A DNA stretch of 64,000 nucleotides, taken from IMG/VR virus record IMGVR_UViG_3300023174_000045, positions 1-64,000 of that record, one strand, 5' to 3'. The notes below the pieces were generated by a model, which saw nothing but the letters and a program-made list of their open reading frames with translations, ran no database searches and had not been told where the DNA came from. The position numbers and the translations under genes were made by a program. Positions 26,712 to 36,655 of this stretch are shown here, piece by piece; position 1 is the first letter of the stretch; every line of letters starts with the position of its first letter.

Positions 26712-27553
26712 CCACCATCACACAAACAGCCGCAGAAACCGCAGCCTATTCACAAAAAATGGGCACACTAAAAGGTCTAGACCTAGCGGCCAATACTACC
26801 ACACCTATACCTGCCGCAGTGGCCACATACTATGCCACCAACATAGCCAAAGGATCAGGGCCCAATGGCACATACTTGACCACAGACTTTTTTGGATCAG
26901 CCGCTGGCATTCCTTACAACACAGATTTGACCACAGTGATCAGCACTATCAATGCTCAACTCACTGCTGGCACACTCACAGCACTCAATACCATATACTC
27001 ACAAATGAAAAGTGTAGTAACATCAGCCTATGGCGCACCACCCACAGTTGTAATACCATCAGGTCCTGCGGCCGGTACCTATGCCACATATGATGCAGCC
27101 ATTGCAGCCTTGGTCACTGCGGCTGACGCGGCCATTGGCACAGCCATCACCGCCATGGGCACTGCTACCACAACACTGAACACTGCCTGGACTGAAATGG
27201 TTCAGCACAGTGTGAACGAAAGTACTTTTCAAACTCAGGCCAGTATTGACTACGCCACGCTCACAGCTGGTGCACAGTTGCCTATCACTGCATTTATCCC
27301 TGCACTGGGTGGGTACGGCCAAGAAACACAAACTGGCATGGCAGCACAGTTTTTAGAAAGCATTGCCAACACCGCCAATGAATATGGTCAGGCCATGGTA
27401 GGTGCGTTACGTGAAGGACGCAACACCGCAGGACTCAACGCTGCCGGACTAATACCTGACAACGATGTGCCTAGCCAACCCAATGCAGTGCCACCGCAGG
27501 CCACACTCAGCAACTCAGAATACACAGTGGCCGAAGCCCGGGCACAAGTGTAA
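26708..27553 (+). CDS. putative baseplate/tail structural protein
   Basis: Ala/Thr-rich helical ORF coupled to previous gene. Confidence 0.55.
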   Translation: MTTITQTAAETAAYSQKMGTLKGLDLAANTTTPIPAAVATYYATNIAKGSGPNGTYLTTDFFGSAAGIPYNTDLTTVISTINAQLTAGTLTALNTIYSQMKSVVTSAYGAPPTVVIPSGPAAGTYATYDAAIAALVTAADAAIGTAITAMGTATTTLNTAWTEMVQHSVNESTFQTQASIDYATLTAGAQLPITAFIPALGGYGQETQTGMAAQFLESIANTANEYGQAMVGALREGRNTAGLNAAGLIPDNDVPSQPNAVPPQATLSNSEYTVAEARAQV

Positions 27554-27575
27554 AAAAGTAGTACTTTTGTAGTAC

Positions 27576-27604
27576 TTGACCAATAATTCCCAAAATGCTA
27601 TAAT
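27576..27604 (+). promoter_or_regulatory. early sigma70 promoter
   Basis: TTGACC-N17-TATAAT, preceded by 11-bp-period GTAGTACT repeats. Confidence 0.85.
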
Positions 27605-27610
27605 AACAGC

Positions 27611-27754
27611 ATGAACCGGGTAAACCAATTTAAACAAAAAGTATTACTAGCATACTATCGTACTAAGTTCACGGTGGTGGAATTGCTGGTGATTGCAATG
27701 CTGATATTTTGGTTGACCAAAAATTCCATTTTGTATATAATAGAGTTATTGTAG
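27611..27754 (+). CDS. 47-aa membrane peptide with prepilin-like N-terminal helix (not in ORF track)
   Basis: MNRVNQFKQKVLLAYYRTKFTVVELLVIAMLIFWLTKNSILYIIELL; ATG 6 nt after TATAAT. Confidence 0.5.
   Translation: MNRVNQFKQKVLLAYYRTKFTVVELLVIAMLIFWLTKNSILYIIELL
27713..27741 (+). promoter_or_regulatory. early sigma70 promoter
   Basis: TTGACC-N17-TATAAT. Confidence 0.85.
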
Positions 27755-27771
27755 TAAAAAAGGAGCCAAAG

Positions 27772-28047
27772 ATGTATTACATTGTTTCTAGAGGTACTGG
27801 GATGATTGTCACAGATGGTCCCAACAGAACCCGTGCTTACAAAACTTTTGGTGCGGCCCGTGCAACACGGACTCGCCTGTGCAACAAAGCAGGGTGGAGC
27901 GTGGACCAACTCAGCATCATTGCCACCAGGTATTACACACCCAAGATGGTTGTGCGTACCAATCTCATGACTGGCAAAGAATTCCTGGAAGATGTCAACA
28001 CCCCCAACTGTTGCTCGCCAGCCAGCGAAACTTTTTGGAGCATGTAA
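27772..28047 (+). CDS. early hypothetical protein
   Basis: SD AAGGAG; ends TPNCCSPASETFWSM. Confidence 0.75.
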   Translation: MYYIVSRGTGMIVTDGPNRTRAYKTFGAARATRTRLCNKAGWSVDQLSIIATRYYTPKMVVRTNLMTGKEFLEDVNTPNCCSPASETFWSM

Positions 28048-28072
28048 TACTTGAGTATTACCGTTTTGGTGG

Positions 28073-28101
28073 TTGACCAATAATTACCAAAATGCTATAA
28101 T
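28073..28101 (+). promoter_or_regulatory. early sigma70 promoter
   Basis: TTGACC-N17-TATAAT; palindrome GTAATACT-TG-AGTATTAC upstream at 28044-28061. Confidence 0.85.
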
Positions 28102-28125
28102 ATGGACATATTGTAACAAAAGGAG
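28090..28125 (+). repeat. 36-bp direct repeat (-10 box through SD), copy 1
   Basis: AAATGCTATAATATGGACATATTGTAACAAAAGGAG identical at 57248-57283. Confidence 0.9.
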
Positions 28126-28131
28126 CCTGAG

Positions 28132-28413
28132 ATGACATACGCAACAATCCAAGAAATTAACACTGCCATCATGTTTGGCAATTTTACAAACGATCAACTC
28201 ACCAGCATTGTGAATGCGGTGCAGTATGCTCGTGCCCAGTTAGGCAAGCAAAAGATCCGCACATTCACCAAAGGTGACACAGTCAAATTCCACAGCACCA
28301 AACGTGGTGTCACTGTCACAGGCACAGTAACCAAGGTTGCCATCAAGTATGTCACAGTCAAAGACGGTGTTATGCTGTGGAAAGTTCCTGCTAACATGTT
28401 GGAGGCCGCATAA
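28132..28413 (+). CDS. early hypothetical protein (SH3-like C-terminus)
   Basis: SD AAGGAG; KGDTVKF..GTVTKV..KYVTV. Confidence 0.75.
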   Translation: MTYATIQEINTAIMFGNFTNDQLTSIVNAVQYARAQLGKQKIRTFTKGDTVKFHSTKRGVTVTGTVTKVAIKYVTVKDGVMLWKVPANMLEAA

Positions 28414-31552: not shown

Positions 31553-32020
31553 ATGACCAAGAAAATCTATTACGAAAAACGTGGACGTAGGTATGTGCCT
31601 GTGTCAGAATACGATAGTGAATACCTGGACAGTTTCTCTAAGGGCACACACATTGTGATGTGCTACCCAGGCGGTCAAAGCCGCCGATACAACATCGATC
31701 CCAACTACGCCGCAATGATTGCCGCAGGGCGTGTTGCTGAAGATGCTATCTGTCGAGCCATATCCAAATCTAGCGAAATGCGTCCGCAACGAACTCCTCT
31801 CACTCTAGGACAACAACGGGCCTGGAAAAAGTTAGCCAAAGAGTTTGGCGATGATTTGGCCACACTGAGTCTGGGCTGTGCCAGAGATCATGCCGAAGCC
31901 GGCGTACAGGCCATGCAAGCGGAAGCGGACAAACTGCTAACCAATCCCGCTGTGCGGCTGGCCTACGAGCAGTTTCTCCTGGTGTGCGAATTAACTAAAA
32001 AACAAGTTGACAACGCCTGA
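31553..32020 (+). CDS. conserved hypothetical phage protein
   Basis: 155-aa ORF. Confidence 0.7.
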   Translation: MTKKIYYEKRGRRYVPVSEYDSEYLDSFSKGTHIVMCYPGGQSRRYNIDPNYAAMIAAGRVAEDAICRAISKSSEMRPQRTPLTLGQQRAWKKLAKEFGDDLATLSLGCARDHAEAGVQAMQAEADKLLTNPAVRLAYEQFLLVCELTKKQVDNA

Positions 32021-32035
32021 CTTTTACAGTATAAT
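32007..32035 (+). promoter_or_regulatory. perfect-consensus sigma70 promoter
   Basis: TTGACA-N17-TATAAT. Confidence 0.9.
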
Positions 32036-32041
32036 TACTGT

Positions 32042-32212
32042 GCATGACCAGGGAGATTGGGTGGCTTAATGGGCATGGTAGGAAGAGATCTTTAACCGGT
32101 CCTGCTGTGTGCCGTGGCATCAGAAGCAGAAATCCCGTAGGATGAGACACTGGCTAGATCTGGCAACAGATCAAAACACTGGCTGGTACCCAGTGGAGTA
32201 TGCCTTGTAGAT
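32042..32212 (+). ncRNA. candidate highly structured ncRNA / long leader
   Basis: About 190 nt ORF-free after a consensus promoter; several hairpins including a GCAA tetraloop, plus long-range pairings. Confidence 0.5.
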
Positions 32213-32234
32213 AAAAACAGTGAGAAGGATAGCA

Positions 32235-32552
32235 ATGTCTGTTGAAATTGAAACCTCTGCGTTGAGCACGTTTGAATCCCTTGACTCTCTTAGATCAACG
32301 CCCTTGGTCATGCACCGTATTCAGATCGAGTTGCGTACTGTCAAAGACTGGTATGCAGTAATACGTGAACTCAATCAAATTGTTGGCGTCAACAATTGGA
32401 AGGGCCAACATCATGTCAAACGCCGATTGGAAAATCTGATCTGGGACGATAGCAAGACCATATGGGTTTGGTTTGATGTGCCTGATGAGAAGATTGCCAC
32501 ATGGTTGGCAGTTAAACTAGCCGTCACTGTCCGTATAACACCCAATAAATAA
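32235..32552 (+). CDS. hypothetical protein
   Basis: SD GAAGGA. Confidence 0.7.
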   Translation: MSVEIETSALSTFESLDSLRSTPLVMHRIQIELRTVKDWYAVIRELNQIVGVNNWKGQHHVKRRLENLIWDDSKTIWVWFDVPDEKIATWLAVKLAVTVRITPNK

Positions 32553-32556
32553 ATCT

Positions 32557-34065
32557 ATGTTCCTCAGTTATTTTACATTGTTAACCGCTCTTTCATTGAG
32601 CGTGGTTGCGGCCTGGTACAGTATACTAGGCCTTACTGCTATTTTTGCCTCAGCAGTGATACCTATTATTATTATGGGATCCATCTTGGAAGTGGCCAAA
32701 GTCACCGTCACAGTATGGTTGCACGAATACTGGCACCGTTGTAGACTGTTGATGAAAATATACCTGGTGCCAGCAGTGGGCATGCTTATGGTGATCACAT
32801 CAATGGGCATTTTTGGTTTTTTAAGCAAAGCACACAGTGATCAAAATTTAATCAGCGGTGACGCACAAAGCAAGATTGCAATATATGATGAAAAAATCAA
32901 AACCCAAAAGGATAATATTGAAGCAAACCGTAAGGCACTTAAACAGATGGATGAGGGCGTGGACTCTGTATTGGGCCGCTCAACAGATGAAAAAGGTGCC
33001 GACAAAGCTGTGGCTCTGCGAAAAGCCCAGCAGAAAGAGCGTGTTAGACTTCAAAATGAAATACTACAGTCGCAGAAGTCCATTGCGGAACTTAACGAAG
33101 CCCGTGCGCCTATTGCCGCCGAGGTACGTAAAGTCGAAGCAGAAGTTGGGCCAATTAAGTATATCGCGGCGTTCATCTACGGAGACAACCCAGACGCCAA
33201 TCTACTAGAACGTGCTGTACGTTGGGTCATCATCATACTTGTGGTGGTGTTTGATCCACTGGCCATCATGATGGTGCTGGCCGCCACAGAGAGCATGAAG
33301 TGGGAACGTGATGCACGTCGTCAACTGGCCTATGAGCCCGATGATGGGGCATTGACAGAGCAACAACTTGAACAACTACGTGCAACAGCAGAACTACCCA
33401 CAGGTGAGGCCATTGAAACCAGTTCATTGTTTGACAAAGACCCTCCCAAGGATCCGCATCCGCCAGGCTGGATGTATGATGAACTACAAACAAACGCACT
33501 CAGCGAAGAGGACGTGGAACAAGTCATTGCTGAATTTGATCAAGTACGACACACCGAACCCACTGTGTTTAACAATGATTATCTGAAAGAGCTCGACAAG
33601 CCCACAGTTGAATACCAAATACTCGAAGATGTCGATGAAGACCTCGACGACAACGATCCATTAAAAGCCGCAATTAAACAATGGAAAGATGAGAACCCCG
33701 ACGGAACCCTCAAGGAAGAACGATATAAACTTGCTCGTGGAAAAATTGATGAACTACCTTGGATGCGTTTGTTAGCAGACAATGACGATCTGGGCAGAGA
33801 ACCATTGACAGGATTTGGCATTGCTTTCCCGGAACAAGCTGTCAAGGGAGACACATTCATGCGTGTGGATCGCATGCCCAGTGTGCTGTACAAGTACAAT
33901 GGTCAGAACTGGATTATTGTGGACAAAACTTTAACAGATAACTACACATACGATGATGCGTATATCGAGCATTTGATCACACAACTGACATCTGGAGAAT
34001 ACGATCCAGACATGTTGAGTGATGCTGAAGCTGATGCTATTGCTCGTCGTGTAAAACCAATTTAA
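32557..34065 (+). CDS. multi-pass membrane protein with coiled coil and acidic cytoplasmic domain
   Basis: 3-4 TM helices, long heptad region; TAAATA 5 nt before ATG. Confidence 0.75.
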   Translation: MFLSYFTLLTALSLSVVAAWYSILGLTAIFASAVIPIIIMGSILEVAKVTVTVWLHEYWHRCRLLMKIYLVPAVGMLMVITSMGIFGFLSKAHSDQNLISGDAQSKIAIYDEKIKTQKDNIEANRKALKQMDEGVDSVLGRSTDEKGADKAVALRKAQQKERVRLQNEILQSQKSIAELNEARAPIAAEVRKVEAEVGPIKYIAAFIYGDNPDANLLERAVRWVIIILVVVFDPLAIMMVLAATESMKWERDARRQLAYEPDDGALTEQQLEQLRATAELPTGEAIETSSLFDKDPPKDPHPPGWMYDELQTNALSEEDVEQVIAEFDQVRHTEPTVFNNDYLKELDKPTVEYQILEDVDEDLDDNDPLKAAIKQWKDENPDGTLKEERYKLARGKIDELPWMRLLADNDDLGREPLTGFGIAFPEQAVKGDTFMRVDRMPSVLYKYNGQNWIIVDKTLTDNYTYDDAYIEHLITQLTSGEYDPDMLSDAEADAIARRVKPI

Positions 34066-34067
34066 AT

Positions 34068-35276
34068 ATGAAATCACCTGAAACCCTAGACAACTGTAGT
34101 TTCTGCGGCAAACACAAAGATTCAGTGGCCAAACTTATTGTGGGCAATGAAGTCTCAATTTGCAACGAGTGTGTGGACCTGTGTCAGACCTTGCTAGTAG
34201 AAGAACTTCCCGAAAAATCAAAAGAAGTCACAGACGACACCCTGGATCCCAGAGCCATCAAAGATCACCTAGATCAGTATGTGATTGGACAGGATCATGC
34301 CAAAATGGTGCTGAGTGTGGCCATTGCCAATCATTACAAACGCATAGCCAATGCTGATGCCAACATAGAAATTGAAAAAGCCAACATCCTCATGCTTGGC
34401 CCAACAGGCTCGGGCAAAACATTGTTGGCACGTACTGTGGCACGTTATTTGGATGTACCATTTGTCATAGCTGATGCCACCAGTTTGACCGAAGCAGGGT
34501 ATGTGGGCGATGATGTGGAGAGCCTGATCACCAGACTGTACACAGCCGCAGGCAGTGATGTGGCCAAGACACAACGTGGTATTGTGTTTGTGGATGAAAT
34601 TGACAAGATCAGCCGACGCAGTGAGAGTGCCAGTATCACCCGAGATGTGTCGGGAGAAGGTGTGCAACAGGCCTTACTCAAGTTGGTCGAAGGAACCAAG
34701 TGCAGAATCACTCCACAAGGTGGCCGCAAGCATCCTTCAGGTGAGACAGTGGAAATTGACACAGCCAACATACTGTTCATTGCCGGTGGTGCATTTGTGG
34801 GCCTAGACAACATTGTCAAAAGCCGGATAAAAGGCACCAGCATAGGATTCAACGCCAAGGTGGGCAATGACAAGACCGCGCACTTAGATCAAACCACTCC
34901 CGAAGACTTGATCAAGTTTGGTATGATACCTGAGTTTGTGGGACGTTTCCCCAGCTGGGTTGCATTGGAAGAACTCACCAAAGAAGATTTGATACGCATC
35001 TTGCAAGAAGTCAAACACAGTTATGTGAGCCAGTACAAATGGCTGTTTCAACGAGATCAAGTTGAACTCAAGTTCAGCACCGACAGTCTGGAATTGATTG
35101 CAGAACGCACCATTGCCAGTAAAACTGGCGCACGTGGTCTGCATTCAGAATTGGAACGTGTGTTGTTGCCCCATATGTATAACCTAGCTCGTTACCGCAA
35201 TCACGGAATCAAAACGGTTTCTATTGACACCCAACAGGTAAATATTCCCAAGGAGCTCAAAGAAATAAATGAATAA
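34068..35276 (+). CDS. clpX: ATP-dependent Clp protease ATPase ClpX
   Basis: C4 Zn finger [34 protein letters not shown] loop, GARGL. Confidence 0.95.
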
Positions 35277-35493
35277 GTCGCATGCTAGATCAGTGTTGGT
35301 ACAAGACAACAACATAGAAAAAGCTCTTCGCAAATTCAAGAAAAAAGTTCAGAATTCTGGGGTATTAGAAGATCTCAGGGCACGTGAATTTTACATCAAA
35401 CCCACCACAGCTCGTAAACTCAAACACAGTGCCGCAAAAAATCGTTGGCGCAAAAAACTTGAAAGTCAACAACTCCCTCCCCGCACACACTGA
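35269..35493 (+). CDS. rpsU: 30S ribosomal protein bS21
   Basis: ALRKFKK, LRAREFYIKPT, SQQLPP tail like Burkholderiales S21. Confidence 0.9.
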   Translation: MNKSHARSVLVQDNNIEKALRKFKKKVQNSGVLEDLRAREFYIKPTTARKLKHSAAKNRWRKKLESQQLPPRTH

Positions 35494-35729
35494 TGTACAT
35501 TGAGTTTGATTTGTCGGGAATTAAAACCAGTGGTGAATTTTTATTGTTACGCAAAGAATTACTGGAGTGGGGCAAACGATACAGCATCGAATATCGTGAA
35601 AAAACTATCAAACGCACACATCGTGTGACTTTTGACCAAGACGAAAATTATTCTTTTTGGGCAATAACTTGGAATCCACACTATAATTTCCAATATCGCA
35701 TTGTGTCTGACCTAAATAACAAAATATAA
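35493..35729 (+). CDS. hypothetical protein
   Basis: Coupled to rpsU. Confidence 0.65.
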   Translation: MYIEFDLSGIKTSGEFLLLRKELLEWGKRYSIEYREKTIKRTHRVTFDQDENYSFWAITWNPHYNFQYRIVSDLNNKI

Positions 35730-35819
35730 TTCTGGGTTGTGTTATAATAAATACTGATGTAGTGCCCATGGTGGGGCTACAATTCAAAATGTCATCTTGC
35801 TTAATAAAGGAGAAAACAA

Positions 35820-36278
35820 ATGACAAAAACTCTAACCCTTCGCAGTTTCGATCTTCCCGCACTTCACAAATTTGGTATTGGTTTTGATAACATGTTTGAT
35901 GAGATCATGCGTGTCAACGCTCAACAAAGCAACAGCAACTATCCACCTTATGACATTGTGCAAATCAACGATGATGAGTACATGATCTCAGTGGCTGTGG
36001 CCGGCTTTGGAGCAGATGACCTCACAGTGACCAAGGACAAGAAAACCTTGATCATTGAAGGCAAGCACAGCCGTGAGACGGTGGACAACGAAGACGCCAC
36101 TGCAAAATATTTGCACAAAGGCATAAGCGAACGCAGTTTCCGTAGAGAGTTTACATTAGCCGACTATGTAGAGATCAGCAATGCTCATCTTGAACTGGGC
36201 ATACTCAGCGTACATTTAAAACGCGAAGTACCCGAACAAGACAAGCCAAAGACCATTGCAATTACCTACAAAGAGTAA
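35820..36278 (+). CDS. small heat shock protein (Hsp20/IbpA family)
   Basis: YPPYDI, VAGF, YLHKGIS.RSF.REF.L, A.L..GIL. Confidence 0.93.
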   Translation: MTKTLTLRSFDLPALHKFGIGFDNMFDEIMRVNAQQSNSNYPPYDIVQINDDEYMISVAVAGFGADDLTVTKDKKTLIIEGKHSRETVDNEDATAKYLHKGISERSFRREFTLADYVEISNAHLELGILSVHLKREVPEQDKPKTIAITYKE

Positions 36279-36343
36279 TATAATGTAAATACAGTGACAG
36301 CAATCCTGCTGTCACTAATTGAGTAGCAAAGCAAGGAATAGAA

Positions 36344-36655
36344 ATGGCACACAGCGATACCCGCACACGAATCAAACCATCAGAGGCCGTAATAGAGCCG
36401 CCTATGTTTAAAGTTATCTACTTGAACGATAACCAAACCACAATGGAATTTGTTGTGGACAGCCTGGTCGAATATTTTGACTACACACCGGCCACTGCCG
36501 AACAAATCACCATAGACATTCATCAAGCAGGACAAGCCACAGTGGCAGTGTTGCCTTACGAAGTTGCCGAACAAAAAGGCATCGAAGTCACAATCAGCGC
36601 AAGATCACAAAGTTTTCCACTGCAAATCAAGCTGGAACCTGAAACTGTAAATTAA
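36344..36655 (+). CDS. clpS: Clp adaptor ClpS
   Basis: FKVIYLNDNQTTMEFVV, IHQAG, FPLQI. Confidence 0.9.
   Translation: MAHSDTRTRIKPSEAVIEPPMFKVIYLNDNQTTMEFVVDSLVEYFDYTPATAEQITIDIHQAGQATVAVLPYEVAEQKGIEVTISARSQSFPLQIKLEPETVN

What the first reader, a model, noticed from the sequence alone, without database searches (positions are those of the whole stretch)
32007..32234. ~170-190 nt ORF-free, densely structured RNA behind a perfect TTGACA-N17-TATAAT promoter
Seen: GACC/GGTC and GGAGATT/GATCTTT stems; CTGCT...TGC-CGTG-GCA...AGCAG hairpin; ATCC-CGTA-GGAT; GATCTG-GCAA-CAGATC (GNRA loop); CACTGG/CCAGTG. Two crossing long-range pairings are possible (TGGGTG 32058-63 with TACCCA 32187-92; GGGCATG 32071-77 with TATGCCT 32199-205). 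CACTGGCT occurs twice (32148 and 32177), allowing alternative folds. Non-coding space is otherwise scarce in this genome. Inference: an abundant early phage ncRNA (ribozyme, decoy/sponge, anti-defence RNA) or a switchable leader. It does not match tRNA, tmRNA, SRP, RNase P or group I cores by eye.
Basis: partly seen in the sequence, partly recalled or inferred. Interest (0 to 1): 0.72.

Follow-up and report, generated by a model that had tools for sequence, protein, structure and literature searches.

The report
New structured phage leader RNA
A roughly 165-nucleotide RNA fold, conserved and covarying in over 130 sequence variants and matching no known RNA family, starts the transcript of a ClpX/S21/Hsp20 operon in freshwater jumbo phages and most likely controls translation of that operon's first gene.

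Summary
The 12/12 TTGACA-N17-TATAAT promoter (32007-32035) is confirmed. It is conserved in 106 of 114 distinct relatives, and its -10 hexamer ends exactly 6 nt before an invariant GCAUG. The 214-nt gap (32021-32234) has no conserved ORF. Thermodynamic stability alone is unremarkable (z +0.75). Comparative evidence is strong: 138 unique homologues from lake viromes and metagenomes, 93.6% of cells paired, and 30 of 43 pairs with compensatory changes. The fold is a four-way junction (P1, P2-P3, P4, P5) plus a covarying pseudoknot. That pseudoknot joins junction 32148-32156 to the tail 32208-32222, ending 2 nt before the Shine-Dalgarno sequence. The element is single-copy and always lies directly 5' of a 105-aa gene, which is followed by a membrane protein, ClpX, bS21, Hsp20 and ClpS. 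Rfam 15 has no match. Lake metatranscriptome contigs cover the leader. The best reading is a cis-acting regulatory leader that gates translation, with the effector unknown. One unexplained extra is that the P3 apical loop carries hexamers that change between clades but stay palindromic, which suggests RNA-RNA kissing.

The parts
32007..32012 (+). -35 hexamer TTGACA; it overlaps the last codons of the upstream gene p4 (stop at 32018-32020)
   Evidence: 12 of 12 match; conserved as TTGACN in 106 of 114 distinct upstream sequences
32030..32035 (+). -10 hexamer TATAAT, 17-nt spacer
   Evidence: spacer is 17 nt in 104 of 106; the -10 ends 6 nt before GCAU in 102 of 106, which puts the expected transcription start at about 32042
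32042..32046 (+). P1 5' strand GCAUG, at the predicted first nucleotide of the transcript
   Evidence: invariant in 84 of 85 representatives; pairs with 32199-32203; no covariation, so the pairing is inferred
32047..32058 (+). J1/2, a conserved purine-rich joiner (consensus A-Y-C-A-R-G-G-A-G-A-U-K) that resembles a Shine-Dalgarno sequence
   Evidence: alignments A2, A3 and A5
32059..32067 (+). P2 5' strand (G32059, GGU 32060-62, GCUU 32064-67)
   Evidence: pairs with 32124-32136, with U32133 bulged; 7 of 8 pairs show compensatory changes
32070..32082 (+). P3 5' strand
   Evidence: pairs with 32101-32114; 11 of 13 pairs show compensatory changes
32083..32100 (+). P3 apical loop (about 18 nt) with palindrome AGAUCU 32086-32091 and a second palindrome ACCGGU 32095-32100
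   Evidence: the loop site stays palindromic while its sequence changes (AUCGAU, GUCGAC, CUCGAG, UUCGAA, UAGCUA, GAUCGAUC and others)
32101..32114 (+). P3 3' strand
32115..32123 (+). Conserved internal-loop strand UGGCA plus variable nucleotides. GGCA 32116-32119 could alternatively pair with UGCC 32201-32204 (P1')
   Evidence: G-C 99, A-U 16, G-U 12, one mismatch. This pairing competes with P1
32124..32136 (+). P2 3' strand
32137..32147 (+). J2/4 conserved core (G)UAGG-N-UG-M-G-R
   Evidence: UAGG, UG and G are invariant across all alignments
32148..32156 (+). Pseudoknot 5' strand: helix a CACUG 32148-32152, helix b CUA 32154-32156. In other clades this segment is pyrimidine-rich and resembles an anti-Shine-Dalgarno sequence (UCCUU, CCUC)
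32157..32172 (+). P4 hairpin GAUCUG-GCAA-CAGAUC. Relatives cap it with GCAA, GAAA or UUCG tetraloops
   Evidence: 5 of 6 pairs compensatory
32172..32177 (+). Invariant CAAAAC: the last C of P4, the AAAA joiner J4/5, and the first C of P5
   Evidence: invariant in all alignments
32177..32195 (+). P5 hairpin CACUGG-CUGGUAC-CCAGUG
   Evidence: 4 of 6 pairs compensatory
32196..32203 (+). J5/1 (GAG) and P1 3' strand UAUGC 32199-32203
   Evidence: GG-N-GUAUGC is invariant
32208..32222 (+). Tail: pseudoknot 3' strands UAG 32208-32210 (helix b) and CAGUG 32218-32222 (helix a)
   Evidence: The native junction:tail duplex beats swapped partners in 32 of 32 unique combinations. Compensatory sets are UCCUU/AAGGA, UCCAA/UUGGA, CCUC/GAGG, AGA/UCU and AGG/CCU
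32225..32229 (+). Shine-Dalgarno sequence AAGGA of p5, 2 nt after pseudoknot helix a
   Evidence: A-AGG is invariant; the ATG is at 32235
32235..32552 (+). p5, a 105-aa protein: first gene of the operon and always directly 3' of the element
32557..36655 (+). Rest of the operon: p6 membrane protein 32557-34065, ClpX 34068-35276, bS21 35269-35493, ORF78 35493-35729, Hsp20 35820-36278, ClpS 36344-36655

Best explanation
This is the structured 5' leader of the p5-p6-clpX-(rpsU)-hsp20 operon of a lineage of freshwater jumbo phages. Host sigma-70 RNA polymerase should start at about G32042, so the first transcribed nucleotides already form P1. The first ~165 nt fold into a four-way junction (P1, P2-P3, P4, P5) with highly conserved joining strands. 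The 3' tail folds back onto the junction strand between P2 and P4, forming a two-part pseudoknot that ends 2 nt before the Shine-Dalgarno sequence. I propose that the fold acts in cis on translation initiation of p5 and, through coupling and mRNA decay, on the operon. The pyrimidine-rich junction strand either pairs with the Shine-Dalgarno-like decoy in the tail, leaving the real Shine-Dalgarno sequence free, or pairs with the real Shine-Dalgarno sequence and masks it. An effector bound by the conserved core would set this balance. The effector is unknown: it could be a small molecule, an operon product such as p5 or phage bS21, the ribosome, or a second copy of the RNA. Shown: the promoter, the fold, the pseudoknot, the strict linkage to p5, and transcription of the leader. 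Inferred: the switch and its effect on expression.
For: The promoter is a 12/12 match and is conserved in position. 138 unique homologues were collected. In every one of the 57 unique instances from the first two scans the element lies directly 5' of a p5 homologue, even where the upstream gene differs. It is single-copy in the 225-kb record. Covariation on 85 representatives: 93.6% of cells paired against 79.8% in shuffles and 29-41% in slid registers; 30 of 43 pairs have changes on both sides. Invariant G-U pairs fix the RNA strand as +. P4 is capped by GNRA or UUCG tetraloops. The pseudoknot was not part of the covariance model, yet its helix a is 88-90% paired with 3 compensatory pairs. 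Native junction:tail duplexes average -7.7 kcal/mol against -5.5 for swapped partners and are better in 32 of 32 cases; they average -6.8 against -3.1 for a shuffled junction strand. In 13 of 64 distinct combinations the junction strand pairs with the true Shine-Dalgarno sequence at -7.9 to -9.2 kcal/mol, with matching changes such as GUCCUU/AAGGAC and GACCUU/AAGGUC. Leader nucleotide identity to the window (0.87) exceeds that of p5 (0.81) and of its third codon positions (0.74). There is no conserved ORF and no + strand terminator between the fold and p5. Metatranscriptome contigs cover 32059-32300, 32066-32303 and 32080-32299, with nothing on p4 and lower depth on p6. Other promoters of this genome have leaders of about 25 nt.
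Against: No ligand or binding partner is known. The element occurs with only one operon in one phage lineage, and the genes are not metabolic, which is unusual for a metabolite riboswitch. Pairing of the junction strand with the true Shine-Dalgarno sequence is strong in only about a fifth of the distinct variants and is not clearly above shuffles overall (a mean of 23% of shuffles do as well). P1 is invariant and so untested by covariation, and a competing P1' has some covariation. The single-sequence fold is not unusually stable. The RNA-seq evidence is assembled contigs from relatives, not reads. Contig ends may be assembly breaks, a deeper run shows similar depth on neighbouring genes, and DNA carry-over cannot be excluded. 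The CM-fitted alignment leans towards the nested helices.
Confidence: 0.5

Rival explanations
1. It is a stable trans-acting non-coding RNA (decoy, sponge, anti-defence RNA or scaffold) made from the 5' end of the operon transcript. The link to p5 would reflect only a shared promoter. It may act as a dimer or oligomer held together by the palindromic P3 loop.
For: The fold starts at the predicted +1 and is closed by P1, as in many stable RNAs. In three small metatranscriptomes only the leader plus about 65 nt of p5 was assembled, at depth 6-11. The P3 loop palindromes are kept through compensatory changes. The complexity and the conserved joiners exceed what a simple operator needs.
Against: No terminator or conserved 3' hairpin ends the RNA. 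The distance from the fold to the Shine-Dalgarno sequence and ATG is fixed, and the tail that pairs with the core runs into the ribosome-binding site. No orphan copy was seen without p5 among the first 57 unique instances, and p6 follows p5 in nearly all later loci. In the deeper run the neighbouring genes have similar depth.
Confidence: 0.2
2. It is a constitutive structural leader with no switch. It would protect the mRNA 5' end from decay and/or present the Shine-Dalgarno sequence for efficient initiation.
For: P1 at the very 5' end would hinder 5'-end-dependent decay. The pseudoknot leaves the Shine-Dalgarno sequence single-stranded just beyond a helix. Alternative pairing with the Shine-Dalgarno sequence is weak in most clades.
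Against: About 40 invariant unpaired nucleotides in the junctions are far more than a protective hairpin needs. Leader conservation equals that of second codon positions.
Confidence: 0.15
3. It is a self-cleaving or otherwise catalytic RNA.
For: It has a compact multi-helix junction with a pseudoknot and invariant joining nucleotides, and it lies in a phage.
Against: No hit to any Rfam 15 model, the ribozyme families it holds included, in the window or in 13 diverse homologues, even at permissive E-values. Metatranscriptome contigs run uninterrupted through the element from about 32059 to 32300.
Confidence: 0.05
4. It is a DNA-level element (operator, origin or packaging site) or a small protein gene rather than an RNA.
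For: There are palindromic hexamers at about +45 to +60, and an AUG is conserved at 32044.
Against: Invariant and frequent G-U pairs are strand-specific. Compensatory changes occur in five helices, and the hairpins carry GNRA or UUCG caps. The palindromes change sequence between clades, and one variant (GAUUGAUC) is self-complementary only through G-U. ORFs are not conserved.
Confidence: 0.03

Closest known systems
Riboswitches and orphan riboswitch candidates whose aptamer pseudoknot reaches the ribosome-binding site, such as SAM-II, preQ1-II/III and cobalamin classes (comparison from my own knowledge, not tested here)
   Same: Position in a 5' UTR. Covarying helices around conserved junction nucleotides. 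A long-range pseudoknot whose 3' strand abuts the Shine-Dalgarno sequence. Size comparable to the large classes.
   Different: No sequence or structure match to any Rfam 15 family. Tied to one operon of proteostasis and translation genes in one phage lineage. No ligand is known, and the expression platform is only partly supported.
manA RNA motif, a putative cis-regulatory 5' UTR element of cyanophages and Photobacterium, reported in 2026 to self-assemble through kissing loops (bioRxiv 10.64898/2026.07.01.735769)
   Same: A phage 5'-UTR RNA under 200 nt with several hairpins. There is potential for intermolecular loop-loop pairing.
   Different: No Rfam hit to manA. Here the loop is self-complementary (homotypic), whereas manA uses pairs of different loops. 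Assembly is untested here.
Palindromic dimerisation loops: the HIV-1 DIS (my own knowledge), and HYER1 group II-derived ribozymes and other RNA homodimers reviewed in PMC12990946
   Same: A 6-10-nt palindrome lies in a large apical loop and is flanked by purines. It is kept palindromic while its sequence drifts: N-UCGA-N' occurs with all four Watson-Crick combinations.
   Different: The context is a phage mRNA leader. About a quarter of distinct loops keep only a 4-nt palindrome. No dimer has been shown.
Autogenous control of ribosomal-protein operons, and the Shine-Dalgarno-based feedback on rpsU (bS21) in Flavobacterium johnsoniae (PMC9976891, abstract seen)
   Same: The operon contains a bS21 gene. 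The leader carries sequences that resemble Shine-Dalgarno and anti-Shine-Dalgarno elements. A protein product could close a feedback loop.
   Different: bS21 lies 3 kb downstream and is absent from about a third of related loci (58 of 87 have it). No binding has been tested, and no rRNA mimicry has been demonstrated.

Membership tests
Any described RNA family (Rfam 15: riboswitches, ribozymes, sRNAs, leaders) | Match to a family covariance model at or near its gathering score | tested here: not met
   No hit in the whole window at gathering thresholds. Only two chance-level hits at E 3 and 6.2, at 14 and 12 bits against gathering scores of 100 and 47. No hit at E<=5 in 13 diverse homologous loci.
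tRNA / tmRNA | ARAGORN-detectable cloverleaf or tmRNA | tested here: not met
   No genes found in the window.
Sigma-70-type promoter | -35 and -10 hexamers with 17-nt spacing, conserved in position in relatives | tested here: met
   12/12 match. 106 of 114 distinct upstream sequences keep it, with a 17-nt spacer in 104. Transcription downstream but not upstream in three metatranscriptomes is consistent with it. The exact start site was not mapped.
Riboswitch (generic) | Conserved aptamer fold supported by covariation, located in the 5' UTR of the regulated gene | tested here: met
Riboswitch (generic) | Expression platform: mutually exclusive pairing that hides or frees a terminator or the ribosome-binding site | tested here: inconclusive
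   There is no terminator. The junction strand pairs with the tail in all clades and can pair strongly with the true Shine-Dalgarno sequence in 13 of 64 variants.
Riboswitch (generic) | Direct, selective binding of a small molecule | not testable with these tools
   Needs in-line probing or ITC. The gene context (p5, membrane protein, ClpX, bS21, Hsp20, ClpS) suggests no metabolite.
Self-cleaving ribozymes (those with Rfam 15 models, e.g. hammerhead, twister, twister-sister, pistol, hatchet, HDV-like, glmS by my own knowledge of Rfam's contents) | Family core motifs, and site-specific self-scission | tested here: not met
   No covariance-model hits. RNA contigs are continuous through the element. 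Cleavage itself is not testable here.
Intrinsic-terminator attenuator | GC-rich hairpin plus U-run between the leader and the gene | tested here: not met
   No + strand terminator-like site lies in 32040-32330. The hairpin at 32260-32302 inside p5 is not kept by covariation.
Small-protein gene / leader peptide | ORF conserved in frame and length | tested here: not met
Kissing-loop self-associating RNAs | Self-complementary apical loop maintained by compensatory change | tested here: met
   37 of 49 distinct loops carry a palindrome of 6 nt or more, against about 20% of shuffled loops. AUCGAU, GUCGAC, CUCGAG and UUCGAA all occur at the same site. The lineages are not independent, so no formal P value is given.
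Kissing-loop self-associating RNAs | Dimer or oligomer formation | not testable with these tools
   Needs native gels, SEC-MALS or cryo-EM.
Autogenous (protein-binding) operon leader | Binding of an operon-encoded protein to the leader | not testable with these tools
   The p5 model has a generic ferredoxin-like fold with a disordered N-terminus and no significant structural relative. bS21 is in the operon. Neither observation demonstrates binding.

The most novel reading that the evidence does not exclude
The leader may be a self-associating RNA. Its P3 apical loop would form a homotypic kissing complex, so that two or more copies of the leader (or of the excised leader fragment) assemble. 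The assembly state, rather than a metabolite, would set the pseudoknot versus Shine-Dalgarno balance, or would build an RNA scaffold. This would be a concentration-sensing or quaternary-structure RNA in a jumbo phage. It may also read ribosome or bS21 status through its Shine-Dalgarno and anti-Shine-Dalgarno mimics.
Probability: 0.2. Interest if true: 0.8.

Novelty: new member of a known kind. Interest (0 to 1): 0.62.

Why it matters
Complex, strongly covarying RNAs with many invariant unpaired nucleotides have repeatedly turned out to be riboswitches, ribozymes or RNA assemblies. This one is absent from Rfam and abundant in lake viromes. It sits behind a consensus E. coli-type promoter and Shine-Dalgarno sequence, so it should be easy to test in standard laboratory strains. 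It heads an operon that combines proteostasis genes (ClpX, ClpS, Hsp20) with a phage ribosomal protein bS21. A regulator there would show when and how jumbo phages retune host protein quality control and translation. The drifting but always palindromic loop is a directly testable prediction of RNA-RNA association in a short natural RNA, a topic opened only recently by the ROOL, GOLLD and manA structures.

Tried and rejected
1. Single-sequence folding gave no signal on either strand (z +0.75 and +0.14).
2. Rfam searches at gathering and permissive thresholds, on the window and on 13 homologues, found nothing.
3. A nucleotide search of deposited phage genomes found no near relative. Only ClpX-like stretches at about 66% identity matched.
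5. Pairing of the P3 loop with the P4 stem was rejected: P4 covaries (GAUCUG to GACCUG) while the loop stays AGAUCU.
6. Pairing of J1/2 with the junction strand was rejected: J1/2 is conserved while that strand covaries with the tail instead.
7. A hairpin at 32260-32302, where the RNA contigs end, is not conserved by covariation.
8. An unfiltered all-against-all covariance scan was too noisy. A stacked-helix filter recovered P2, P3 and P5.
9. p5 function remains unknown: no Pfam or PHROG family, only 'hypothetical' homologues, and a generic ferredoxin-like fold with no significant structural match.
10. Short contigs encoding p5 were DNA-like and said nothing about the transcript 5' end.
11. 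Host: the two hits in a Haliscomenobacter MAG were not taken as host evidence, because sigma-70-type promoters and strong Shine-Dalgarno sequences do not fit Bacteroidota (my own knowledge).
12. I saw a 7-nt resemblance of CCGUAGG to helix 45 of 16S rRNA from memory. Only UAGG is conserved, so I dropped it.
Full report
**Where it is.** The window is the first 64 kb of a 225,080-bp IMG/VR virus record, estimated about 65% complete. Its relatives are 340-365-kb freshwater contigs. The finding lies in the 214-nt gap between a 155-aa gene of unknown function (p4, 31553-32020) and a 105-aa gene (p5, 32235-32552).

Downstream on the same strand are:
- a 502-aa membrane protein (p6);
- ClpX;
- ribosomal protein bS21, whose start overlaps the clpX stop;
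- a 78-aa ORF;
- Hsp20;
- ClpS.

**Checking the observation.** The promoter is as described: TTGACA at 32007-32012, a 17-nt spacer, and TATAAT at 32030-32035. It is the only 12/12 site in the 15 kb scanned. The gap has only short ORFs. The one starting at the conserved AUG (32044) is 6-60 codons long in relatives, with shifting frames. No ORF of 25 or more codons is shared by more than 39% of 85 representatives.

Energy alone does not show 'dense structure'. The + strand MFE is -51.4 kcal/mol against -54.7 for shuffles (z +0.75), and the - strand gives z +0.14. Rfam 15 finds nothing at gathering scores. At permissive thresholds it gives only two chance-level hits. It finds nothing in 13 diverse homologous loci. 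ARAGORN finds nothing.

**Homologues.** Searches with the two flanking proteins and with a degenerate pattern of the invariant core recovered the element in IMG/VR, JGI/ENA metagenomes and two MAG contigs. In all there are 138 unique sequences, almost all from lakes and rivers.

- The element is single-copy in its own genome.
- In every one of the 57 unique instances from the first two scans, a p5 homologue starts about 30 nt after the fold.
- p6 follows p5 in nearly all assessable loci (222 of 224) and ClpX in 152 of 153. Hsp20 follows in 69 of 73 and bS21 in 58 of 87.
- p4 lies upstream in only about 60% of loci. The linkage is therefore with the downstream operon.
- The leader is more conserved than the gene it precedes. 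Its mean identity to the window is 0.87, against 0.81 for p5 and 0.74 for third codon positions of p5.

**The fold.** RNAalifold, a covariance model (R1) and explicit pair counting give a consistent model. In window coordinates:

| Element | 5' strand | 3' strand | Note |
|---|---|---|---|
| P1 | 32042-46 | 32199-203 | invariant |
| P2 | 32059-67 | 32124-36 | U32133 bulged |
| P3 | 32070-82 | 32101-14 | 18-nt apical loop |
| P4 | 32157-62 | 32167-72 | GCAA loop |
| P5 | 32177-82 | 32190-95 | |

On 85 representatives (below 96.5% identity to each other), 93.6% of cells form standard pairs. The figure is 79.8% after shuffling partners and 29-41% when partners are slid by 1-3 columns. Thirty of 43 pairs show changes on both sides.

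P4 is capped by GCAA, GAAA or UUCG in different clades. The invariant G-U pairs in P1 and at the base of P3 would be C-A on the other strand. This fixes the RNA as + strand. The joining strands carry about 40 invariant or nearly invariant nucleotides (GGAG, AUGG, CCGUGGCA, UAGG-N-UG-N-G-N-C, CAAAAC, GG-N-GUAUGC).

The ATCC/GGAT hairpin is replaced by P2, where G32060 pairs with C32135 and shows G-C, A-U and U-A variants. The other proposed stems and both 'crossing' pairings conflict with covarying helices.

**The pseudoknot and the ribosome-binding site.** The junction strand between P2 and P4 (32148-32156) pairs with the tail beyond P1 (32208-32222).
- Helix a is CACUG/CAGUG in the window's class. 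In the other class it is AGAC/GUCU, GGA/UCU or AGG/CCU.
- Helix b is CUA/UAG in the window. Elsewhere it is UCCUU/AAGGA, UCCAA/UUGGA, CCUC/GAGG or CCUU/AAGG.

This helix was not in the covariance model, yet it is 88-90% paired, with three compensatory pairs. In an alignment-free test, the native junction:tail duplex (mean -7.7 kcal/mol) beat the mean of swapped partners (-5.5) in 32 of 32 unique combinations. It also beat shuffled junction strands (-6.8 against -3.1).

Helix a ends 2 nt before the Shine-Dalgarno sequence AAGGA (32225-29). In most clades the junction strand resembles an anti-Shine-Dalgarno sequence, and its tail partner resembles a Shine-Dalgarno decoy. In 13 of 64 variants the junction strand can instead pair with the real Shine-Dalgarno sequence at -7.9 to -9.2 kcal/mol, with matched changes such as GUCCUU/AAGGAC and GACCUU/AAGGUC. 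In other clades this alternative is weak, so the switch is an inference.

P1 is invariant and so untested by covariation. A competing pairing of GGCA (32116-19) with UGCC (32201-04) shows G-C, A-U and G-U variants with one mismatch in 137 sequences scored. It could be an alternative state.

**Promoter and transcript.** In 106 of 114 distinct upstream sequences a TTGACN-17-TAYAAT promoter is present. In 102 of them the -10 ends exactly 6 nt before GCAU, so P1 begins at the expected +1.

The genome has 28 such promoters, all on the + strand. Most belong to a stereotyped family followed by a Shine-Dalgarno sequence within about 25 nt. A 190-nt leader is therefore exceptional here.

Many lake metatranscriptomes hold part of the stretch. 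In three runs the only contigs laid with a good fit were 220-242-nt pieces. They cover 32059-32300, 32066-32303 and 32080-32299 at depth 6-11, with none on p4 and only depth 2-2.5 on p6. A deeper run gave leader pieces at depths similar to neighbouring genes.

This supports transcription from the predicted promoter and a leader somewhat more abundant than the operon body. However, these are contigs of relatives (about 95% identity), their ends may be assembly breaks, and DNA carry-over cannot be excluded. The inverted repeat at the common 3' end (32260-32302) is not maintained by covariation.

**An unexplained extra.** The P3 apical loop carries, at a fixed place, a hexamer to decamer that differs between clades but is nearly always a palindrome. 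Examples are AGAUCU (window, 32086-91), AUCGAU, GUCGAC, CUCGAG, UUCGAA/AUUCGAAU, UAGCUA and GAUCGAUC. One variant, GAUUGAUC, is self-complementary only through G-U pairs.

- N-UCGA-N' occurs with all four Watson-Crick combinations.
- 37 of 49 distinct loops have a palindrome of 6 nt or more, against about 20% of shuffled loops.
- A second palindrome (CCGG, CCCGGG or CCUAGG) often follows.

A 6-nt palindrome cannot fold on itself, so the simplest reading is homotypic loop-loop pairing between two RNA molecules. Palindromic and kissing contacts hold together several natural RNA homodimers and cages (PMC12990946, PMC12286853). The phage-associated manA 5'-UTR motif was recently reported to self-assemble (bioRxiv 10.64898/2026.07.01.735769). 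Nothing here shows that this RNA dimerises.

**The proteins.** p5 has only 'hypothetical' relatives and no Pfam or PHROG family. Its AlphaFold model (pLDDT 77.5, with residues 1-21 below 50) is a generic ferredoxin-like fold. It has no significant structural match: best Foldseek E is 0.02-0.1 and best Z is 7.1, in the background range.

bS21 and ClpS are clear Pfam matches. Hsp20 and Clp genes are the commonest neighbours of bS21 in published phage genomes (PMC9723584).

**Interpretation.** The data best fit a cis-acting regulatory leader whose conserved core receives a signal and whose pseudoknot sets ribosome access to p5 (confidence about 0.5). The effector is unknown.

A metabolite riboswitch is possible. 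It is not favoured by the single, non-metabolic gene context. A protein of the operon (p5, bS21), the ribosome, or RNA self-association are equally open.

The rivals are:
- a stable trans-acting RNA cut from the transcript (0.2);
- a constitutive stabiliser or enhancer (0.15);
- a ribozyme (0.05);
- a DNA-level or coding element (0.03).

**Novelty.** This is a new family of a known kind (structured mRNA leaders and riboswitch candidates). It is restricted, as far as was searched, to one lineage of freshwater jumbo phages. One genome for each of 185,579 prokaryote species yielded only two true hits, both on phage-like contigs of one MAG.

Noticed in passing
window 35269-35493 (+), overlapping the clpX stop at 35274-35276: A phage-encoded ribosomal protein bS21 (Pfam PF01165, E 3e-19) sits in the same operon as ClpX, Hsp20 and ClpS (36344-36655, PF02617). 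It follows clpX in 58 of 87 related loci.
   Followed up: partly
window 27576, 28073, 49668, 56952, 57231 (+); the rest of genome G000: A family of near-identical promoters (TTGACCAATAATTGCCAAAATGCTATAAT, then about 25 nt ending in AAAAGGAG). All 28 TTGAC[AC]-N16-18-TAYAAT sites of the 225-kb record (27 with a 17-nt spacer) are on the + strand. This suggests a phage-specific promoter class with a conserved spacer.
   Followed up: partly
window 27553-28132: Three strong promoters lie within about 500 nt (27576, 27713, 28073). The first is followed by about 140 nt without an obvious gene start before the second. This may be another non-coding transcript or a small gene.
   Followed up: no
window 32083-32100; the same loop in all related loci: The apical loop of P3 keeps a palindrome whose sequence drifts between clades (all four N-UCGA-N' variants, AGAUCU, UAGCUA, GAUCGAUC). 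A second palindrome (CCGG, CCCGGG or CCUAGG) lies next to it. This predicts RNA-RNA kissing.
   Followed up: partly
L195:3613-3807 (+), L196:278-455 (-): Two different variants of the element lie on two contigs (39 kb and 70 kb) of one 'Haliscomenobacter sp.' MAG. These are probably binned phage contigs. The sigma-70-type promoters and strong Shine-Dalgarno sequences of these phages do not fit a Bacteroidota host.
   Followed up: partly
window 32116-32119 with 32201-32204: An alternative four-base pairing (GGCA/UGCC) competes with P1 and shows A-U and G-U variants (16 and 12 sequences). It is a possible second conformational state of the core.
   Followed up: partly
window 32235-32310 (p5 residues 1-25): The N-terminal 25 residues of p5 are predicted to be disordered yet are well conserved (M-S-V-x-I-E-x-S...S-L-x-S-L-x-x-T-P-x-x-M-H). 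The three metatranscriptome contigs end at about 32300, just inside this segment.
   Followed up: no
window 32195-32177 (-): The terminator-like site called on the minus strand is only P5 plus the invariant CAAAAC read backwards. No convergent gene needs it.
   Followed up: yes
L102 and L103 (element at about 5640 and 5475); loci lacking p4 upstream: The gene upstream of the promoter varies: p4 is adjacent in about 60% of loci and is 2 kb away or absent in the rest. The promoter, leader and p5-p6-clpX stay together as a unit.
   Followed up: yes
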